Shown here in pieces: positions 13,363 to 24,044 of a DNA stretch of 64,000 nucleotides (the stretch's first letter is position 1; each line of letters begins with the position of its first letter). Position numbers and translations under genes: made by a program. The DNA is from Selaginella moellendorffii (Eukaryota; Plantae; Lycopodiophyta): the NCBI RefSeq assembly GCF_000143415.4, contig NW_003314298.1, positions 62,001-126,000 of the forward strand, read 5' to 3'. The notes under the pieces are model-generated. The model did no database searches. It saw only the letters and a program-made list of their open reading frames with translations, and was not told the origin of the DNA.

Positions 13363-16300
13363 TTAAAACGCCTTTACAAGTTCGTTCTTCATGGCCAGGC
13401 CCAGGGGACGCAGCTCGGCTCCATCCTCCAAGCTGGATCCCGGGAGGAGAAGCGAGCGGGCGCCCACGAATGCGTACTCCCCAACGCCGTTGCTGCCAAA
13501 ATGCACGTCGCCGCCGCCCTCGTACACGTGACCAAAGAGTAGCGCGTCTCGCCCAATGCTGCTGCCGGTCTTGACGCTCAGGCGGTCCGGATTGAGAGCA
13601 TACAGTGTGTCCATGTACACACCCGCGGTGTCGATGCTCGCTCCCAGCTGCCGGAGGTAGCCTGTAGAGAGTGCCGAGCCTCTGGTGAGGTCGAGGAAGT
13701 AGCCGCACGCAACCGAGTTGACGCACTGCCACACCGTGTCCTGGAGGCTCCTCAATCCCCACAGCTCGCTCCTGCTCTTCTCCTGCACGCCCTTCCTTCC
13801 TCCAACCAGGATCCTCCTCGCTGAGATGCTGCCCAGGGACAAGACGAGAGCCGACACCATGTACGAGAGCAGGACGAGTGCCAGGAACAGCCAGTCGCTG
13901 CGGGGTGCTCGAGACGCGATCAACGCCGCCGGGAGGAGAGCTGCAAGCTGAGAGAGCCCGAGGAGAGTAGCGGGGGCCAACAGCTGCAAGAGTGGCTGCA
14001 TGCTTCGAATCAAACCGAACTTGAGCCTCGTTTTGGCAGTCGCCGTCGCCGTCTTGCAGTTGGTTTCCGGCAGCACTGCCACGTTGGGCGGAAGGCATCC
14101 GGATAGAGCAGGGCAACCGATGTTGCCGTCGTTGGAAATGTCATTGGCGAGAGGCACGTCTGAGTCTCTCAGGAGGGCTTTCCATGCACCGGGCAGCTCT
14201 GCTCCGTTCCTCACGTACTGAGCAATGTCGTAGGCCACCGACCTCCCGTGGTCTATGGACGCCGACTCCCGCAAGCTGGTTGCCGGGATCATGTCCAGGC
14301 TCGGCACACCGTTCCTGGGGTTGAACCTCATCGCCTCTGTCAGTGCGGGGTCGACAAGCTCGTCAAGGTGTATGGCGGCAACGTCCACGTAAGGGAAAGC
14401 TTGCTCGTCCCACGCGCGGGTGCAGTCGATAGCGAGGTCCCTCTCGGCGAGGCTGTCGGGAACTGGGCGTAGCTGGAGCTGGAGCACGTAGTCCACGCCT
14501 TGCGGGGACGCAAGCCTCCGTGCAAAGTCGTCTCGCAGATAGCTGGGTGAACGCTCGTCTTTGTCTCGTCGAGGCAGCGCGCCGGTGTCCGGCGGGAGCA
14601 CACCCTCCCGTGCAATCCGTCCTTCGTCAACCCCATATTGCGGATCCAGTGGCCTCATTCGGAACCTCACGTACCATTCTCGCTTGGGTGACGAAGCCGA
14701 CTTGAAAAGCCTGGAAACGTTGGAGTAGTAGTGCAGCTCGGCATATGAGTTGCCCAGACGTAGAGAGTCCCACACTGCATCGCCTCTGTGCGGGGAGTCT
14801 TTCACAATCTCCTCCCTGCGCTTGCTGCTCGTCGTCAACCACGTAACAAAGTCGGCAATATTTCTGGCGTAGAAAGCCTGGCCCGTCTTGAGCGTGAGAT
14901 CCACAAGTGACTCGTGAAGCGAACTGTGGTCGTGCCTCAGGATTCGCAGCGAAGCACCGCGGGCATCTGGCCTGGCATCGTCGTCCGAGCTCAAGCTGTT
15001 GCTGTGCCTCACAACAACCGAATACGACTTCCCCTTGGAGAAGACATCGTGGCGGGGAAAGCTGCTGTCCAGGTCTTCCAGCACAGTGAGGCGTCCCTTG
15101 CCACATATCCCAGCCCTGTGGAAGTACCTCGACTTGACGGAATGGCTCGTTTTGCCTATGTGAGCCGAGAGGTTGGCCACCGTCTTTCTGTATTCCGCGT
15201 CCATGGCCACAATCCTGCTGTCTTGCTCGTGAGCTACCGAGGCATGGTTGTATACCATTGTTGGATTCTCTACGCCCAGGTACACACCACCCTGCTTCAG
15301 TGTAAAGCCGCTCGTTGCTACAGACAAGGCTCCCAGCCACGAGCTTTCCTCCATGCAGGAGCCAGGCATAAGCACGCTCTGTGCTCCAACCACGCAGCCT
15401 GTCCCGACGTCAAGCCTCGCGTAACAACCGTTGTCACTGGTGATGACTTTTGCAAAGTCGCCCAAGTGAGATCCACTTCCCAGGTCCAGTAAATCTGGGT
15501 CCAGTATCGCGTTTATAGCTCGGACTGAAGCTCGGTCTCCAACCTTGGCACCTAGCACCCGCAGGTAGAAACACAAGGCTTCGGTGCCCGTGAGCAGGAA
15601 TGTAAATCTCGCATGTGTCGTTGCAAGGAGCCTGCGAACCAGCCAGAGACGATATCCAAAGCTCGAGTTCTTCCTCACTTCTCCCTTGCGTTCCAGCTTC
15701 CCAACCAGTATCCATTTCAGAAGCCAAGTCATCCAGCAGAGGCTGGCACCATAACCGATATAGGCACATCCCATGCACAGCACGAGCGCCAGCAGCTTCC
15801 CCTGAAGAGCAACGTATATCAAGTAGTCGACGATCGAGCTCGGGTCTTGAAACACTGAGAGCGGAATTGCAGCAGTCACGGCCCAAGGGAACGTTGACAA
15901 GAGCGATGACACTATATAGCCTGTTTGTGATTCCCTTGCTCCAGCCGGTAGGATACCGAGCTTGTCAACGAGCCACACAAAAACCACGTATCCGACCACC
16001 CCGGAGATCGCAGATACGAGGCTCACAACGTACAACCCGGCTGCTTGACACAATGTGTACAACATTGTGCTGTTCTTGTCCTGCAAAGACAAATGGTAAG
16101 AAGCCAAAAGAAATGAAAAGAAGCAATCACCTGTCGACGTGAGGGGTGAACTTTGGAAGAATCATCCTCAAGGTGACGAACTCCAAGCTGGCTGGTTCCA
16201 TCAACCTTACCCAGTGGAGACACCGACGTGGCCCTCAGGGATGCACCAAGGCCAATGAAAGAGTAGGGACCGATGGAACACCTCCGTCCTATTCTGATGG

Positions 16301-19300
16301 GCTTGAACTGGACAGCACCGGCTTTCACCTCGTGGCACTGCAGGGTTGCACCCTCTCCGATGGCAGCACCGTCACCCAGCACCACAAGCCAAGGGTCTGT
16401 AATATCTGTTGTCTCCAGCTCAACTCCGGATCCAATCTGTGCTCCCAGCAGACGGTACCACCAGTTGACAAAAACCGTTCCCCGCAACTGAGTCGCTACT
16501 ATCCTGGCCGATGCGAAATCCTGGAGCCTGTAGCATGTCCACCACCTTACGAAGTTGAGCGACCATAGCGGGACTGTGGTCCGAAGATGAAGCACCGGAA
16601 GCAGGAAGCTCGTCCCAAGACTGGCTGCCAACGCCGTGGCTGCCATGTAGAGCAACCAGCACAAGGGAGCACAGAGCACCGCAGCGACAACAGGCCGGTC
16701 TGCAACCAGGGACGTGAACTGCCTCAGGATAAACGCTGCAGGGACGAGGAGCGTCCATGCCACGTAAATGATGCCCAGGAGCTGTAGAAGAGTGATGCAC
16801 ACTTGGCGTTGGAGCGATGGAAGAATGCCGGATTCCAGCTGAGAGTCCGTCACGATCTCGCCCTCAAAATCGTCATCTGTATAAGGTCCCCCGCGGCACG
16901 ATGACAAGCTAGCTTTATCATCGATTTCAGTGCCCTGTTGCTGCTGCGTTACTACTGTCTTGCCGACGAGACCGTCCACCACGTCACACAGCTCAGATAT
17001 GCAACCAGCAGTGTAGATGTCGATGGCCGCAACGTGAACTCCCAGAAAGTTGGATAGCTTCTGTGATGCCCACACCACCGCAACGGAATCAAGGCCGTAG
17101 TTTGCAAAGCTTTGGGACGGCGACAGCTTGGACAAGTCGATGCCTGTCCGTTCGGAGATGATCTGGCAGATGAAGTTTGAGATCTCGGTCTTGCTCGGCC
17201 CCTTAGCCGAGACATCGGTTTCTGGTATCGCAGGTGGCACTACTGGCTGCGAAGACGTAGAGGACTTAGTGGTGAGCACCAGGCTCTCGACTGAGTCGGC
17301 AAGCTCTGAGATGCAGCCGGCCGTGTAGATGTCTATAGCAGCAACGTGAACTCCCAAGAAAGATGAGAGCTTGTGAGCGGCCCACACGACAGAGCTCGAA
17401 TCCAGTCCATAATCTGCGAAGCTTTTCGTGGAAAGGACTTGAGCCTGAGATAATCCCAACTTTTCAGCCAGGATCTCCGTCAGGAAGCTAGTAACCCCGG
17501 CTTTGCTACGAGCAACACTGGCAGCAGACGGTGGCGGCGTCGGTGGTATCACGCTAGGAGTCCCACTAAAAGTTCTCGACCTTCGAAGTCTTAGAATTTT
17601 CTTAGTCTTCTCAATCGTGGGACTTATGCTGTCCAGCCTGTCCTCAGTGAACTGCTTCAAACAGTCAAGCCTCCGTATCTTTCCCGATGAAGTTTTTGAG
17701 ATCGTTCGCGGCTTGACGAGCCTCACCGAAGCGACACTCAAGCCATGCTCACTCGCAACCATAGAGGAAATGTGTGCAGTGAGCTGCTCGGGATCAACCT
17801 TTGATTCGTCTCGCACTTCTGCAACCACCACCACCCCAACTTCGTCCTCGTCACAAACTTTGATCCCTTTGGAGTGGAGGGCTCGTCCAGGCGCACCAAA
17901 AGCAGCACAGCATCCAGGCCTGAGTGATCCGGAGCATGCTTCCACGGTCTTTTCAATGTCGGACGGGTAGACGTTCCGGCCCCTGATGATAATCAAGTCC
18001 TTGATCCGCCCAGTCACAAACAGCATGCCTTTGACCACCCTTCCCAGGTCGCCAGTCCTGAGAAACCTGTTAGCTTCTTCACCGCCTTCTAACCTTGCAT
18101 GAAAAGTGTCCTGACTGAGCCTCTCGTTTCCCCAGTAACCGGCACCATTGCTCGGACTTCTCACCCAAATCTCTCCCTCCACACCGTCTCCCACTTCCAC
18201 GCCAGTCTCTGGATCTACGATCCTCACATCCACGTCCGGGTTGCCCCTGTCCACATACCCGCAGCAAACCTTGCCTTGCCAGTCCACAACTAAAGGCCTG
18301 CCCCGCCCCCATGCAACGCTGACGAACACACAGTTCTCGGCCAGTCCATAACCAGGAGCAACAACCTCTTCCTTGAGCCCCGAGCTTTCCATGGTCTTGA
18401 GAAATCTCTTGAGCGTGGAGCTTCTTACCGGCTCGGCACTGACCATGAGGAACTTGAGGCACGAGAGCTGGTACGTGATGCCGGGTTGTTGGTTCATCTT
18501 GTTGACGACGAGATCAAACGCAAAGTTGGGTGCCGCGCTGTGCGTTGCCCCGTACTTGCTCATGGCCTCGAGCCACAACAAGGGCCTCCGGATGAAGTTC
18601 GTGGGCGACAAGAGAATGGCGGTGCCACCACTCACCAGCGCAGTGAAGAGGCCCCCGATGAGACCCATGTCGTGGTACTGCGGCAACCAGCTCACCAGCA
18701 CCGTCCTGGACGTGCTCTTGTACCGCCGCCGCATCAGCTTCACGTTGTGGATGAGAGCGGAGTGGGTGATGATGACGCCCTTGGGATCGCCAGTAGAGCC
18801 CGACGTGAACTGGAGGAAGCAGCATCTTTCACTCTCCTCGGCCTCCCCGCGACCCCTAAAGTAATCCTCGGCCTCTTTGTTTTGCTTGGAAACCCACAAG
18901 TCGGTGTGCATCCAGGGAAGCTTTGGCCACGACGGTCGCCCGCCGGACCTCGACAGCAAAGTGTCTCGGATTGCTGACGCGCGCACGGCGGTGTGGTAGG
19001 CGACTGTGGACAGGATGGCCTTGGCACCGCAGGCGGCTGCCACATTCTCCACTTTGGCCAGCGCATGGGAAGAAGAAGAGGAGCTCCCTCGACTCGCGAC
19101 GTCCGGAGGGATGAGGGGCACCGGCAACACCTATAGATAGCACACGAAGGTAAGCAAACAAAGCTTTCTCCTCTAGATCTCCACGACTTACATTGGCGCG
19201 CAGGCAGCCAAAGAAGGCCTCGATGAATTCCAGGCCGGGGTTGTAGAGGAGAAGCACTCGGTCCCCGTCATGGAGCGTGACCTTGTGGGTGACGAGATTG

Positions 19301-21107
19301 TGGGCGATGGTGTTGGCGTTGTTGTGGAGCTGAGCGTAAGTCCTGGAGCCTGATTCGTCACCCTTGTCGTCCAGCCAGGTGTAGAGGACCTTGTCCCTCG
19401 CCACGCTGTGCTTGGCATAGAAGTGGAGGTAAGAATCCAGGCATGGAAGGTCGGGAAATTCGCCGCCCGTGGCCTCACTCGTCACCTCCAAGTCGCCACC
19501 CTCGGCTTCATCAAGCTTGATCGCTGCGCCCGTGATCAAGTTCTGCAAAGTTTGCTTAAAGCTGAGAAACGCAGAAGAAAAAGTTCCACCTTGACTTTTG
19601 CGGGCGTTCCAAAGTTCTTGGCGATGAGGTTCATCGCGTACGCCGCATTGCGCTCCGTGAGCTCGAAAGCAAACAGGCCTCCTACATAGTAAGTATCGTT
19701 GCATCCTTGTAGCGATTCAAGCCGGTCGTATAATCCAGATCTCATATCTGTGAAACCAGAAAGAAACATGTAATGCGGGGATAGAAAATTGTAGTGTGTG
19801 TTTACCTTGCGAGCCAATGTGGGGGAAGTAGTTCCATTTTCTCTGCAAGACAATGCGTTCCACAGTGCCACCAATACGTGCCACGTCCTGGAGCAACAGC
19901 GCGGTCATCATCTCCTGGCTGACTTGAGCATTCCCATACGACCAAAAGAGATAGATGTTGGTGTCGGCATAGAATTTTTGCATGGCCACCGGGTGACCAA
20001 TCTCCTTTGCATCTTCAACATTGTCTTTGAAATAGTAAAATCCGGCCGGGAATTTATTCTCGAATCGCGAGATCTCCAGAACTGTTGTGTAGTAGTCCAT
20101 AGTCCGGACCCTGCTGAAGAGGCTGGCTTCTTCGTCTCCAAGTGTCATTAGCTCCGCGCCTGGTGGAGCAAAGGGTATCGCTCCCGAGATGACGATCTTG
20201 TCGAACTCGAGCTCCTCTGATTCCTCGCCCCCGTCCGAGCTTGAAGTGCAAACTGTGACTCCTCGGCCGGATCCTCGTCTCCGGATCTCCGTGACTCTGG
20301 TGTTCAATCGCACGCGAGGTAGCAGCCTCGCCACTCCTTGCCACAAGCCGGTGTAGCCGCCCTTGATCCTGCAAACCTTCCCAAACATTGAGGTGCGAAC
20401 GAACTCGTGCAAATACGCATAGGGGATATCCTGCTCGTGTGGGAAGCCATATCCAGAAGCCGTGTAACCAGTGGCAACAGCCTCTGGTATTCTTCCCATG
20501 CCGTGCTTGGCCGCAAATTCGGCTGCTGTCTCCGGTGCAAGGCTGCTAAGTGCGTGAACTCCAGTTTTACCAGTTGATGCTGCTTGTGCCTGATCAGAGA
20601 CAATATCTATTATCAAAACAAAGCCCCTCGATGCATGGTTAAATCACCTGAAGGTCAAGAGTGATCTGGATCATGGAGATGTAGTCTCTGGCTATCCCAA
20701 GATCTTGGTACGTGCCAGTTTTGGAGTCGACAAGGCTGAGCTTGTGAGCCGCCATGTCTTCCATGCCAACCCTGGCCACTTGCGCGAGATGCTTGATGTT
20801 GGGAGCACTCTCCCGGGCAATCACCTGACCACCCAAGTCATACGGTCGGCCTGCCAACCGTGTCAAAATTTCACCAGTGATTGATTAGTGTTGAAGCATG
20901 TATATTACCTTGGATGTCCACGCTCTCACACATTCCTCCCACGGTGTGGTGCTTCTCAATAAGTGTGACTTGCTCATATCCCAGCTTCCACAGCGCATAC
21001 GCTGCGGAGACACCGCTGGGTCCTCCCCCGACAACGCAGATCCTGCTGCTTCTTGGGAGCGACGGGTGAAGCTCCTCCAGCAGCTCATGGACTGCCGACG
21101 CTTCCAT
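13363..21107 (-). CDS. NRPS-like multidomain enzyme, ~2470 aa: FAD oxidoreductase (PAI-like) - fatty acyl-AMP ligase - ACP - ACP - TM/LbH - TM/LbH - catalase-related AOS-like heme domain - TM/LbH
   Basis: Seven exons join in frame through GT-AG introns: 21107-20909, 20850-20648, 20589-19806, 19747-19590, 19542-19192, 19130-16131, 16080-13363 (7413 nt). Motifs: VVGGGPSG, FLQFTSGSTGDPKG, WLPQYHDMGLIG, YGLAE, RTGDLG, KTSSGKIRR, YGLDS twice, RYFHRAG, RHSN, RSVAY, and hexapeptide repeats. Confidence 0.9.
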
Positions 21108-21218
21108 CTTTCTCGATGGATCAATTCGCAACTAAAGTTGTAAATCACATATATCCACACAAGAGATCTCTCTAGAGCTGTGTGGTTAAGCTATAAGCCG
21201 GCTGGCTCGCTCGAGGAA

Positions 21219-21226
21219 TTTATATA
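21219..21226 (-). promoter_or_regulatory. Putative TATA box of the multidomain enzyme gene
   Basis: TATATAAA on the minus strand, about 110 bp upstream of the ATG at 21107. Confidence 0.5.
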
Positions 21227-21763
21227 GCGCGTATGCAAGATCATAAAGGCAAACAAGGGGGAAGCGGCCAAGGGGACAACACCAAAAACAACGAGTCGTC
21301 GGCATTGGCGAGAGCATACACACTGAATATCTCTATTGCGATGCCGGGATATATGAATATACCGGCCTTGTTTGTCCTGCGCTCACTAGGAATAAGAGAT
21401 TCCAGGTGGAGGCATTTTTACCCCGTCTCTATACGCCAGAGTTGACAAAACCACATAGCCGAATTTCGAGCGACCAACATTGAGTGGACGAGAGAAAACG
21501 TATGAACTTCTAGCAGATAAAACAACCACAACGTTCACCACCCAGCCAAGATGCATCTATAGGCAAGAGATGAATGAAGATGCTCAGGTTTGCATCCAAC
21601 AGGACTAATGCAAAGGTGGAGGTTATTTTAAACGAAAAGTGGCGATCGTGGATGGAATATGCCCATTGATGAGCAAAGCAAGGGATCACGGAGCTCCTGG
21701 TAAGGTACGAAGGAATGTAGGTCTTGCGCGGCACCAGGCGCCAGATCCACACCCGCGCCCGCC

Positions 21764-24044
21764 ATGAGGAGCCGGAGCGATCCCGCCCACTGCACGCGCA
21801 CCCTCCTCTCCCTCACATTCCTCGCGGTGCTCGTCTGCTCCGTCTACTACACCCTCTTCCTCCGATCTCGCCTCCACTCCGTCCAGCAGGGCCAAGGCCA
21901 CGGGGATTTGCCCAGGAGCTCCAGCAAGGTAGCAATCACCACCGGCATTTCTACTGCCGCTGTTGATGAAGAAGAAGATGGCGTTGCCAGCCACTCGGAG
22001 GAGGTGGAGGAGGACGGCATCCACAGCCATAAGCTAGCGGATGAAGAACAGTCCGACGATGTGGTGGAGACCACGGCGGTGCAAAGTTTCCTGGTACGTA
22101 CGGCAGTGCAAAGTCTAAGGTCTCACGCTTCTTGAGCTCACATCTCCTACAATGCAGGTGTGTGACGAGAAGTTCACCGAGATAATCCCGTGCCTCGACC
22201 GGACAATGCTAGCTTACTTGAAGAACAAACCAAACTACACGCTCATGGAGCACTACGAGCGGCACTGCCCTCCTGCCGACAGGCGGATCAATTGCTTGGT
22301 GCCTCCTCCAGCCAACTACAAGGTATGCGAGGAGTTTCTCTCTGTACGAGTGAGACTGTGTTATTCGATCAGGTGCCGATAAAGTGGCCTGCAAGCCGAG
22401 ATCAAGTGTGGCGTGCGAACGTGCCTCACACATTTCTGGCATCCGAAAAGTCTGACCAGCACTGGATGGTGATCAAGGGAAACAAAGTCATCTTCCCAGG
22501 AGGAGGCACTCACTTCCACGATGGCGCTGATAAGTACATTGCTGGGCTTGGAAAGGTAGGCACACTCTTCATCTCCATTGTAGCGATGAACGTCTCGACG
22601 TCTCCCAGATGCTCAAGAATCCCGACGGAGACCTCAGCAGCAAAGGGAAGATCCGGACTGTGCTAGATGTCGGCTGTGGCGTCGCAAGCTTTGGTGCTTA
22701 CCTTCTGCCGCTCGACATCCTTGCCATGTCCATGGCCCCAAACGACGTGCACGAGAACCAGATCCAGTTTGCTCTGGAGCGAGGCATTCCATCGACTTTG
22801 GGTGTTCTCGGGACCATGAGGCTGCCTTTTCCGAGTAAAGCTTATGATCTGGCGCATTGCTCTCGGTGCCGTATCGACTGGGCTCAGCGGGATGGCATTC
22901 TGCTGTTGGAAGTGGACAGGGTGCTGAGACCGGGGGGATACTTTGCGTGGTCGTCACCAGCGGCTTACCGAGACGACGACGAGGACAGAAAGGAATGGGA
23001 CGAGATGACCAGCTTGACAAGCCGAATGTGCTGGTCCATTGCTGCCAAGGAGGGCCAAACTGTGATCTGGATGAAGCCACTGACCAACGAATGTTACAAG
23101 GAGCGGCCGAGGAACACCAGGCCTCCTCTGTGCAGTCCACAGGATGATCCTGACGCAGCATGGCAAGTGAAGATGAAAGCTTGCCTTGTGCCACTGACCG
23201 AGCGTACGTATAAACACAGCTTCCCCTTGCCAGGTTTCTCACTCGTCCGCCACCTTGCTGGCTAAACAGAGAACGATGCCATGAGAGGCAGCGGATTGTT
23301 GCCGTGGCCCGAACGTCTGGTTGCACCTCCGCCCAGGCTGGAAGAGCTACACATTAGCGACAGGGATTTTGAGGCAGACACGGTATGGTCTTTGTCCAGA
23401 TCTCGCTCGCTAGCTTGTTGACACGGTGATTGGAGTTTGCTTTGCTAGGCTGCATGGAAGGACAAGGTTGAGGTGTACTGGGAGAAGCTCGAGCTAGTGA
23501 AAGATTTCAGCGTTCGCAACGTTATGGATATGAAAGCTCACCTGGGTGGCTTTGCGGCTGCGCTCAAGGACAAGCCGGTGTGGGTGATGAACGTAGTGCC
23601 TGCCAGCGGCCCAAGCACGCTCAAAGTCGTCTATGATCGTGGACTCATCGGCTCGTATCACGACTGGTAATCAGCTCGAGCGTTGCACCGGTGCACTAAT
23701 GTGGGGTCTTTGATGCTAGGTGCGAGTCATTTTCTACGTACCCGCGTACCTACGACCTGCTGCATGCGTGGGACGTGCTCTCGGACGTAGACTCCCACGG
23801 CTGCAGCGTCGAGGATCTCCTCCTTGAGATGGACAGGCTGCTTCGTCCCATGGGATACGTTATCATCCGGGACTCGCCCGTGATGGTGGATCAGGTGAAA
23901 AAGTACCTTGGGCCCCTGCACTGGGATGCTTGGGTCCAGGAGTTCCCGGCCGAGTCGGATATGATGCAGGACAACGAGGAGGCCGTGCTGCTGGTCCGAA
24001 AGCGCCTGTGGAAACCAGGCTCGGCTTTTGGGCAAGCGAGGTAG
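21764..24044 (+). CDS. DUF248/PMT-family SAM-dependent methyltransferase (Golgi type II membrane protein), multi-exon
   Basis: N-terminal TM, IPCLD, MEHYERHCP, FPGGGTHF, VLDVGCGVASFG, HENQIQFALERG, RNVMDMKA, STYPRTYDLLHA. Confidence 0.95.

What the first reader, a model, noticed from the sequence alone, without database searches (positions are those of the whole stretch)
19590..21107. N-terminal FAD domain resembles the bacterial PUFA isomerase PAI rather than a plant amine oxidase
Seen: RICVVGGGPSG, EKHHTVGGMCES, YDLGGQV and KWNYFPHIGSQDMRSGLYDRLESLQGCNDTYYVGGLFAF. The last segment parallels the C-terminus of the Cutibacterium acnes linoleate isomerase as I recall it (WYYFPHV...GWYEKVEGMQGRRNTFYAG). 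Inference: it generates conjugated fatty acids for the downstream FAAL.
Basis: partly seen in the sequence, partly recalled or inferred. Interest (0 to 1): 0.7.

Follow-up and report, generated by a model that had tools for sequence, protein, structure and literature searches.

The report
Plant PAI-like flavin domain confirmed
The first 448 residues of a giant Selaginella fatty-acid-processing protein, conserved across vascular plants, really do belong to the family of the bacterial linoleate isomerase PAI rather than to the amine or protoporphyrinogen oxidases, but what reaction this domain carries out is still unknown.

Summary
Window 21107-19590 (minus strand) holds four exons separated by 58-nt introns. 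A 47-nt intron, seen spliced in a transcript-like contig, joins the domain in frame to a FAAL. The product is SELMODRAFT_410953 (2385 aa).

The domain is not PAI's orthologue (22-23% identity). It belongs to a separate subfamily whose bacterial members are nearly all fused to the same partners: FAAL, ACP and a catalase-related haem domain that usually sits directly before the PAI-like domain.

The claim that it makes free conjugated fatty acids for the FAAL is therefore plausible but untested. Action on the FAAL/ACP-bound chain, coupled to the haem domain, fits the fusions at least as well.

The plant architecture was published in 2021 as 'HemY-FAAL-catalase', function unknown. The scan has also noted a second copy of this gene elsewhere in the same genome.

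The parts
20909..21107 (-). Exon 1: start codon (21107-21105), Rossmann beta-alpha-beta with GGGPSG, E51 and the GG motif (VGGMC). Ends in phase 1.
   Evidence: Pfam NAD_binding_8 E 3.9e-11; identical exon use in P0042.
20851..20908 (-). Intron 1, 58 nt, GT..AG.
   Evidence: Read; P0042 model; 9-letter loose end at 20908 in an X1 contig, 8 of 9 letters matching the start of exon 2.
20648..20850 (-). Exon 2: YDLGGQV, plus the loop with plant-invariant H102-K103, which aligns with PAI R87-R88.
20590..20647 (-). Intron 2, 58 nt, GT..AG.
   Evidence: Skipped in X1 contig record 3.
19806..20589 (-). Exon 3 (261 full codons): substrate-side domains, GYG loop, plant-specific HEF-RTSM-GK-RIKGG segment, W-x-YFPH motif.
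   Evidence: PDB phmmer hits only 2b9w significantly, E 2.5e-6; Pfam Amino_oxidase weak, 8.6e-7.
19748..19805 (-). Intron 3, 58 nt, GT..AG. The position is shared with angiosperm orthologues, whose truncated about 405-aa gene models read through it.
   Evidence: Skipped in X1 contig record 2; P0003/P0004/P0006 end at ...SQ|GI.
19590..19747 (-). Exon 4: C-terminal FAD-binding motif (LQG..TYYVGG..FE) and the end of the PAI-like domain.
   Evidence: Top PDB hit 2b9w residues 380-422, E 0.09 for 52 aa; family-invariant Q409, G410, T414, G418.
19543..19589 (-). Intron 4, 47 nt, GT..AG. Its removal joins the FAD domain in frame to the FAAL; unspliced, the frame stops at 19536.
   Evidence: Skipped in X1 contig record 2; used in P0042 (...PAKVK|NLITGA...); an unspliced contig also exists in X2.
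13363..19542 (-). Rest of the same gene: linker, FAAL, two ACPs, a membrane/hexapeptide-repeat region and a catalase-related domain (context, not re-annotated exon by exon here).
   Evidence: Pfam/NCBIfam on ORFs 16023-19130 and 13363-16107; Pfam on P0042.

Best explanation
Window 21107-19590 (minus strand) encodes the N-terminal 448-residue FAD domain of a 2385-residue multidomain protein: PAI-like domain, FAAL, ACP, ACP, membrane/hexapeptide-repeat region, catalase-related haem domain.

Shown: the domain is a true member of the flavoenzyme family typified by Cutibacterium acnes polyunsaturated fatty acid isomerase (PAI), sharing its whole three-domain fold and not just the FAD-binding part. 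It belongs to a distinct subfamily that is almost always fused to a FAAL, an ACP and a catalase-related domain.

Inferred: like PAI, it uses the flavin to take a hydride from an allylic or bis-allylic carbon of an unsaturated fatty acyl chain. The outcome would be either double-bond migration (conjugation) or a net oxidation. This would be one tailoring step on a fatty acid that the adjacent FAAL activates and loads on the ACPs, functionally coupled to the haem domain. The substrate, the product and the order of steps are not known.
For: Family membership:
- Exon 3 alone hits only 2b9w significantly (E 2.5e-6).
- The Acacia orthologue hits 2b9w at E 3.7e-16 over residues 21-404, against Rossmann-only matches elsewhere.
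- The 92-sequence profile hits 2b9w at E 9e-105 over its full length; the next hit is 3.8e-33 over the N-terminal 270 positions only.
- The AlphaFold model has pLDDT 93.9 and pTM 0.93.
- Foldseek: 2b9w E 2.7e-31, TM 0.79/0.83; CpaO 4e-22; all others 8e-19 or worse.
- Family signature columns are kept: GxGxxG, E51, GG, GYG, W-x-YFPH, LQG..T.Y.G.

Fusion to the FAAL: a spliced contig across the 47-nt intron and the identical model in P0042.

Subfamily and coupling:
- Among the relatives retrieved, local phmmer with P0042 segments finds 24 FAAL-CAT-PAI, 16 CAT-PAI, 4 CAT-PAI-ACP, 4 FAAL-PAI and 4 PAI-FAAL proteins, some of them near-identical members of one cluster. Pfam confirms the architecture for three of them.
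- Their catalase-related domains match the plant C-terminal domain at E 1e-40 to 1e-55.
- In the tree, the plant domains fall inside a 98%-supported clade that contains all fused forms, apart from the stand-alone clades.
- Fatty-acid context: a FA_desaturase gene follows P0047, and ketoacyl-synthase genes precede the cyanobacterial gene.

Purifying selection: orthologues of about 2300 aa occur in eudicots, monocots, Amborella and ferns at 49-54% identity, and 169 of 448 positions are at least 95% identical across 121 plant sequences.
Against: - No enzymology exists for any member of the fused subfamily.
- Identity to PAI is only 22-23%, and PAI fits a stand-alone clade better (369.6 bits) than the fused clade (247.2 bits).
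- CpaO, the next structural neighbour, is an oxidase/cyclase, so the fold does not fix the reaction.
- Plants replace family-conserved residues: K59M, Y82A, A191Y, K196E and T208R.
- The column aligned with PAI Arg88 is not conserved across the family.
- AlphaFold was trained on the PDB, which includes 2b9w. The fold match is therefore not fully independent of PAI, although the sequence profile result is.
Confidence: 0.6

Rival explanations
1. One reading: a stand-alone-style PAI reaction. The domain takes free linoleate or linolenate, conjugates the double bonds with no net redox change, and releases free conjugated fatty acid, which the downstream FAAL then adenylates.
For: PAI is the closest solved relative by sequence and by fold. 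In plants the domain lies directly N-terminal to the FAAL. Plant-invariant H102-K103 aligns with PAI R87-R88; as I recall from Liavonchanka 2006, a paper not held here, Arg88 anchors the free carboxylate.
Against: The plant domain is not in PAI's subfamily. In bacterial relatives the domain order is FAAL-CAT-PAI-ACP, with the PAI-like domain after the FAAL and next to the carrier. The Arg88 column is not conserved in the family. This reading leaves the constant companionship of the catalase-related domain unexplained.
Confidence: 0.2
2. An oxygen-consuming flavoprotein oxidase or desaturase. After taking the hydride, the reduced flavin is re-oxidised by O2. The result would be a more unsaturated or oxygenated chain (possibly a hydroperoxide) that the catalase-related haem domain then rearranges. 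In that scheme the PAI-like domain plays the part that lipoxygenase plays in coral allene oxide synthase-lipoxygenase fusions.
For: A catalase-related domain lies immediately N-terminal to the PAI-like domain in most of the multidomain relatives (24 FAAL-CAT-PAI, 16 CAT-PAI, 4 CAT-PAI-ACP), with strong homology to the plant C-terminal domain. Characterised catalase-related enzymes of the coral type act on fatty acid hydroperoxides made by a fused lipoxygenase (PMC5617202, listed). No lipoxygenase-type Pfam match was found in the four full-length proteins scanned (P0042, P0047, P0054, P0057). CpaO, the second-closest structure, is an oxidase.
Against: This is purely an argument from domain association. 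No flavoenzyme of this family is known to make hydroperoxides.
Confidence: 0.2
3. An ordinary flavin amine oxidase or protoporphyrinogen oxidase (HemY), as automatic annotations and the 2021 paper label it.
For: Pfam Amino_oxidase matches residues 31-270 (E 2.3e-12). Database names include 'Amine oxidase', 'FLOWERING LOCUS D-like' and 'protoporphyrinogen oxidase'. The published label is 'HemY' (PMC8460268).
Confidence: 0.03
4. A catalytically dead, structural or regulatory remnant of a flavoenzyme.
For: The lysine after the GG motif, conserved in 93% of the family, is Met in plants. Several other family-conserved residues are also replaced.
Against: All dinucleotide-binding glycines, E51 and the C-terminal FAD motif are kept. 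169 of 448 positions are at least 95% identical across vascular plants, including the substituted ones. That pattern is typical of a working, specialised site.
Confidence: 0.04

Closest known systems
[quoted passage not shown] 2006, PNAS 103:2576)
   Different: Only 22-23% identity. PAI is a stand-alone 424-aa enzyme and fits a stand-alone clade best. The plant domain is fused to FAAL, ACPs and a catalase-related domain and sits in the fused clade. Plants have M for PAI K45, A for Y67, E for K183 and S for F168. Activity is untested.
CpaO, beta-cyclopiazonate dehydrogenase (PDB 9kp8/9vex; PMC13003489)
   Different: 17-18% identity. It is a fungal indole-alkaloid oxidase/cyclase with covalently bound FAD. 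It shows that the PAI-like fold supports reactions other than isomerisation.
Plant 'HemY-FAAL-catalase' proteins noted by Patil et al. 2021 (eLife 10:e70067, PMC8460268)
   Same: The same protein family. [quoted passage not shown]
   Different: The N-terminal domain was labelled HemY or amino acid oxidase there. Here it is shown to be PAI-family, and its nearest relatives are bacterial FAAL-CAT-PAI-ACP proteins.
Coral and cyanobacterial catalase-related allene oxide synthase-lipoxygenase fusions (e.g. PMC5617202)
   Same: A catalase-related haem domain placed directly N-terminal to an enzyme that activates the bis-allylic position of a polyunsaturated fatty acid. The bacterial CAT-PAI didomains have the same layout.
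   Different: The partner here is a PAI-family flavoenzyme, not an iron lipoxygenase. In plants the two domains lie at opposite ends of the polypeptide. This is an analogy only; nothing was tested.
Flavin amine oxidases and protoporphyrinogen oxidases (Pfam PF01593: maize PAO, MAO, LSD1, PPOX)
   Different: The substrate domains do not match by sequence (matches stop at about residue 270). All these structures rank well below PAI.

Membership tests
PAI (polyunsaturated fatty acid isomerase) flavoenzyme family | Sequence homology to PAI over the full length, including the non-FAD domains | tested here: met
   Exon 3 alone: 2b9w E 2.5e-6, residues 147-376. Acacia orthologue: E 3.7e-16 over residues 6-378. 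Family profile: E 9e-105 over residues 4-423.
PAI (polyunsaturated fatty acid isomerase) flavoenzyme family | Three-domain PAI fold matched better than any other flavoprotein fold | tested here: met
PAI (polyunsaturated fatty acid isomerase) flavoenzyme family | FAD-binding elements (GxGxxG, acidic residue ending beta-2, GG motif, C-terminal motif) | tested here: met
   G27, G29, G32, E51, G58, Q409, G410, T414 and G418 are kept. Exception: the Lys after GG (PAI K45, 93% of the family) is Met in 116 of 121 plants.
PAI (polyunsaturated fatty acid isomerase) flavoenzyme family | Family signature motifs outside the FAD site (GYG loop; W-x-Y-F-P-H) | tested here: met
   G180-Y181-G182 and W386, Y388, F389, P390, H391 are present. 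The columns are 72-100% conserved in the 89 non-plant sequences of alignment A1.
PAI (polyunsaturated fatty acid isomerase) flavoenzyme family | Substrate-entrance residues of PAI (Arg88 carboxylate anchor, Phe193 gate, Phe168). The residue roles are recalled from Liavonchanka 2006, which could not be read here. | tested here: inconclusive
   PAI R88 aligns with K103, invariant in 120 of 121 plants, but the column varies across the family. F168 aligns with S179. The F193 region is remodelled into a plant-specific basic segment and its alignment is uncertain.
PAI (polyunsaturated fatty acid isomerase) flavoenzyme family | Same subfamily (orthology) as the characterised enzyme | tested here: not met
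   PAI scores 369.6 bits against stand-alone clade S2, 288.3 against S1 and 247.2 against the fused clade. Plants lie in the fused clade (98% support). More than 150 clusters are closer to the plant domain than PAI is.
PAI (polyunsaturated fatty acid isomerase) flavoenzyme family | Redox-neutral isomerisation of linoleate to a conjugated diene | not testable with these tools
   Needs an enzyme assay (234-nm diene formation, product analysis).
Flavin amine oxidases (Pfam PF01593: MAO, PAO, LSD1) | Homology across the substrate domain, and best fold match within this class | tested here: not met
Protoporphyrinogen oxidase (HemY) | Match to the PPOX family models or fold above other families | tested here: not met

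The most novel reading that the evidence does not exclude
PAI-family flavoenzymes and catalase-related haem domains form a conserved two-enzyme unit, widespread in bacteria as FAAL-CAT-PAI-ACP proteins and present in a rearranged order in all vascular plants sampled. This unit would carry out a lipoxygenase-independent transformation of a carrier-bound polyunsaturated fatty acid. The flavin domain would activate the bis-allylic carbon, as lipoxygenase does in coral AOS-LOX fusions, and the haem domain would rearrange the product, yielding an unrecognised class of plant and bacterial oxylipin-like or conjugated lipids.
Probability: 0.25. Interest if true: 0.85.

Novelty: new variant of a known kind. 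Interest (0 to 1): 0.6.

Why it matters
A protein of about 2300 residues, conserved at about 50% identity from lycophytes and ferns to rice, tomato, soybean, apple and cotton, has no known function. Its N-terminal domain is mislabelled in databases as amine oxidase, HemY or FLD-like.

Placing it in the PAI family turns 'unknown oxidoreductase' into a concrete, assayable hypothesis: flavin-mediated chemistry at an allylic carbon of an unsaturated fatty acyl chain.

The same flavin, FAAL, ACP and catalase-related domains recur in many bacterial proteins. This defines an uncharacterised enzyme module, suggests where the plant gene came from, and offers simpler bacterial models in which to find the reaction.

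If the module makes conjugated or oxygenated lipids, it would be a new branch of plant lipid metabolism, and PAI-type enzymes are of biotechnological interest for conjugated linoleic acid.

Tried and rejected
- The joined exons were never sent to any tool. Exons were searched one by one by reference. For the full domain I used the database protein P0042:1-448, which a search returned; it is 99% identical to exon 3 and 96-97% to the exon stretches by tblastn, probably the other haplotype. The model and the residue numbers therefore refer to P0042, not to a translation of the window.
- The search for related loci on genome contigs failed twice because neither alignment had a stretch conserved enough to search with. 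No organism-wide survey of bacterial loci was made. Context came from four encoding-contig look-ups instead.
- The two primary PAI papers (PNAS 2006, JBC 2009) are not held, and a text search for the residue names found nothing. The roles of Arg88, Phe168 and Phe193 are from memory and marked as such.
I compared clade profiles against 2b9w instead.
- Literature searches for a catalase-related/flavin/FAAL fusion found only the 2021 eLife note.
- Raw RNA reads (X21, X22) gave only a few reads over 19300-19770, too few to measure expression.
- The amine oxidase, PPOX and dead-domain readings were considered and rejected; see the rival explanations.

Full report
**What is in the sequence**

On the minus strand, an open reading frame starts at ATG 21107 and runs through four exons: 21107-20909, 20850-20648, 20589-19806 and 19747-19590. 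The three introns between them are each exactly 58 nt with GT..AG ends.

After exon 4, a 47-nt GT..AG intron (19589-19543) joins the frame to the FAAL reading frame (…PAKVK|NLITGAAIK…). Without that splice the frame stops at 19536, and the FAAL frame has no start codon of its own.

Contigs of public run X1 skip exactly 19543-19589, 19748-19805 and 20590-20647, so three of the four introns, including the short one, are seen removed. Intron 1 is supported by a short loose end and by the database protein. An unspliced contig covering 19463-19835 exists in run X2. Raw RNA reads are sparse.

The exhaustive protein search returned P0042 (2385 aa, named SELMODRAFT_410953, Selaginella moellendorffii). 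It is 99% identical to exon 3 and uses exactly this exon model. I used P0042:1-448 as the reference for the whole domain and did not join exons myself.

**Is it PAI-like?**

Yes, by three lines of evidence; the fold match is not fully independent of the other two (see the last point).

- *Single sequences.* Exon 3 (261 aa) has one significant hit in the whole PDB, 2b9w, the C. acnes isomerase, at E 2.5e-6 over PAI residues 147-376. The 52-aa exon 4 also has 2b9w as its top hit. A 419-aa Acacia orthologue hits 2b9w at E 3.7e-16 over residues 21-404. Putrescine, spermine, L-amino-acid and monoamine oxidases and LSD1 match only the first 80-230 residues, at E 1.5e-7 or worse.
- *Profile.* An alignment of 92 domain sequences (A1), which does not contain PAI, hits 2b9w at E 9e-105 over residues 4-423. 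The next hit, a monoamine oxidase, scores 3.8e-33 and covers only the FAD-binding 270 positions.

One caveat: AlphaFold was trained on the PDB, which includes 2b9w. The profile result does not depend on that.

**Which part of the family?**

The exhaustive search found 453 clusters at E 0.001 or better, and PAI's own cluster is not among the best 150. The plant domain therefore has many closer, uncharacterised relatives.

I mapped their architectures with local phmmer, using segments of P0042 as queries, and checked three with Pfam. Some of the proteins counted are near-identical members of one cluster.

| Architecture | Proteins |
|---|---|
| FAAL-CAT-PAI | 24 |
| CAT-PAI | 16 |
| CAT-PAI-ACP | 4 |
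| FAAL-PAI | 4 |
| PAI-FAAL | 4 |

'CAT' is a domain matching P0042 residues 1801-2125 at E 1e-40 to 1e-55. The Pfam Catalase model passes for some of these domains (P0064 5.8e-14, P0054 1e-8) and misses others.

Named members include 2007-aa 'FAD-dependent oxidoreductases' of the cyanobacteria Coleofasciculus and Trichocoleus. Their gene carries a thioesterase and is preceded by ketoacyl-synthase genes. A metagenomic FAAL-CAT-PAI-ACP-acyltransferase gene is followed by a fatty acid desaturase gene.

A quick maximum-likelihood tree puts the three plant sequences (100% support) inside a 98%-supported clade of 53 rows that holds every fused form. Two clades of stand-alone proteins of about 420 aa lie outside it.

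Clade profiles score PAI as follows:

| Clade profile | Score against PAI (bits) |
|---|---|
| Stand-alone clade S2 | 369.6 |
| Stand-alone clade S1 | 288.3 |
| Fused clade | 247.2 |

PAI itself therefore belongs with the stand-alone enzymes, and the plant domain is a paralogue, not an orthologue. The two stand-alone members I looked at have no FAAL or catalase neighbours.

**Conservation and plant-specific features**

Full-length orthologues of about 2300 aa with the same Pfam set occur in many eudicots, in monocots including Oryza, in Amborella and in ferns. They share 49-54% identity with the Selaginella domain.

Across 121 plant sequences, 169 of 448 positions are at least 95% identical. 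The FAD-binding glycines, E51, the GYG loop, W-x-YFPH and the C-terminal LQG..TYY.GG motif are all kept.

Plants differ from the rest of the family at several otherwise conserved columns, and these differences are themselves invariant or nearly so in plants:

| Change in plants (P0042 numbering) | PAI residue at that position |
|---|---|
| K59M | K45 |
| Y82A | Y67 |
| A191Y | not mapped |
| K196E | K183 |
| T208R, next to R207 | not mapped |
| Y350W | not mapped |

H102-K103 aligns with PAI R87-R88 in both the pairwise and the profile alignments. That column is variable in the wider family. This pattern looks like a working but re-specialised substrate entrance, not decay.

**How it most likely works**

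*Shown:* PAI-family fold and motifs, a covalent link to the FAAL and ACPs, and membership in a subfamily that travels with FAAL, ACP and a catalase-related domain.

*Inferred from the family* (PAI mechanism as summarised in PMC13076199): the flavin interacts with the double-bond system of an unsaturated fatty acid and mediates an ionic rearrangement through a carbocation-like intermediate.

*Inferred from domain order in the bacterial relatives:* tailoring domains placed between an adenylating domain and its carrier usually act on the carrier-bound substrate. The chain is therefore probably processed after FAAL loading and in concert with the haem domain.

Whether the outcome is conjugation (no net redox) or an O2-dependent oxidation cannot be decided here. 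The oxidative version would make the flavin domain the counterpart of the lipoxygenase in coral catalase-related AOS-LOX fusions. That is an analogy only.

It does not explain the association with the catalase-related domain.

**What is known already**

Patil et al. [quoted passage not shown] The architecture is therefore not new.

I found no paper that identifies the N-terminal domain as PAI-family, or that describes the bacterial FAAL-CAT-PAI proteins. Database names for the orthologues are inconsistent: carrier domain protein, FadD26/28/32, amine oxidase, 4-coumarate-CoA ligase, aminoadipate reductase.

Earlier notes of this scan identified the genome as Selaginella, described the whole gene and its catalase-fold domain, and recorded a second copy on another piece of the genome. 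I confirmed the organism name and the Catalase match. I did not examine the second copy.

**Verdict**

The enzymatic part is plausible but unproven, and the evidence from relatives shifts the likely context from 'feeds the FAAL' to 'tailors the FAAL/ACP-bound chain together with the haem domain'. This is a new variant of a known enzyme kind, of moderate to high interest because the host protein is a conserved, uncharacterised giant enzyme of vascular plants.

Noticed in passing
window 22152-24044 (+ strand): The neighbouring gene on the opposite strand, with introns, encodes a putative SAM-dependent methyltransferase of the plant Methyltransf_29 family (PF03141, E 2.8e-90 for ORF 22609-23265).
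   Followed up: partly
window 36000-60000: A long stretch with strongly negative GC skew (about -0.25) and negative AT skew, interrupted around 48-50 kb. The cause was not examined; it may be repeats or one long strand-biased element.
   Followed up: no
window 19463-19835: A contig of run X2 covers introns 3 and 4 unspliced, while run X1 has them spliced. This is either genomic DNA in the run or intron retention; retention would end the protein after the FAD domain at the stop at 19536.
   Followed up: no
P0003, P0004, P0006, P0007 (angiosperm gene models of about 405-419 aa): Several angiosperm 'proteins' end just after ...YFPHV.SQ with a few residues of read-through, exactly at the intron position shared with Selaginella intron 3. 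They look like truncated models or retained-intron isoforms, not stand-alone enzymes.
   Followed up: partly
L001 and L002, 8567-16030: In Coleofasciculus/Trichocoleus the 2009-aa FAAL-CAT-PAI-ACP-thioesterase gene is directly preceded by two short ketoacyl-synthase fragments and a small ORF. This may be a compact, uncharacterised lipid gene cluster.
   Followed up: no
L003, 10001-17653: A metagenomic FAAL-CAT-PAI-ACP-acyltransferase gene is followed by an unannotated 394-aa gene and a membrane fatty acid desaturase (PF00487), apparently in one operon.
   Followed up: no
P0079 (892 aa), P0094 (2149 aa): These two relatives carry two PAI-like domains in tandem. P0094 also has a region matching the plant membrane/hexapeptide-repeat part and is named 'protoporphyrinogen oxidase/acetyltransferase-like isoleucine patch' by its source.
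   Followed up: no
P0191-P0196 (Eucalyptus grandis and E. globulus): Eucalyptus has several near-identical full-length paralogues with neighbouring locus tags (J00810 and J00816; ACJRO7_003743 and 003749), which suggests a tandem gene array.
   Followed up: no
window 19300-21300 compared with P0042: The window's product differs from the database protein at a few residues (e.g. P18S, R309G, N354T in P0042 numbering), and run X1 shows four single-base differences.
   Followed up: partly
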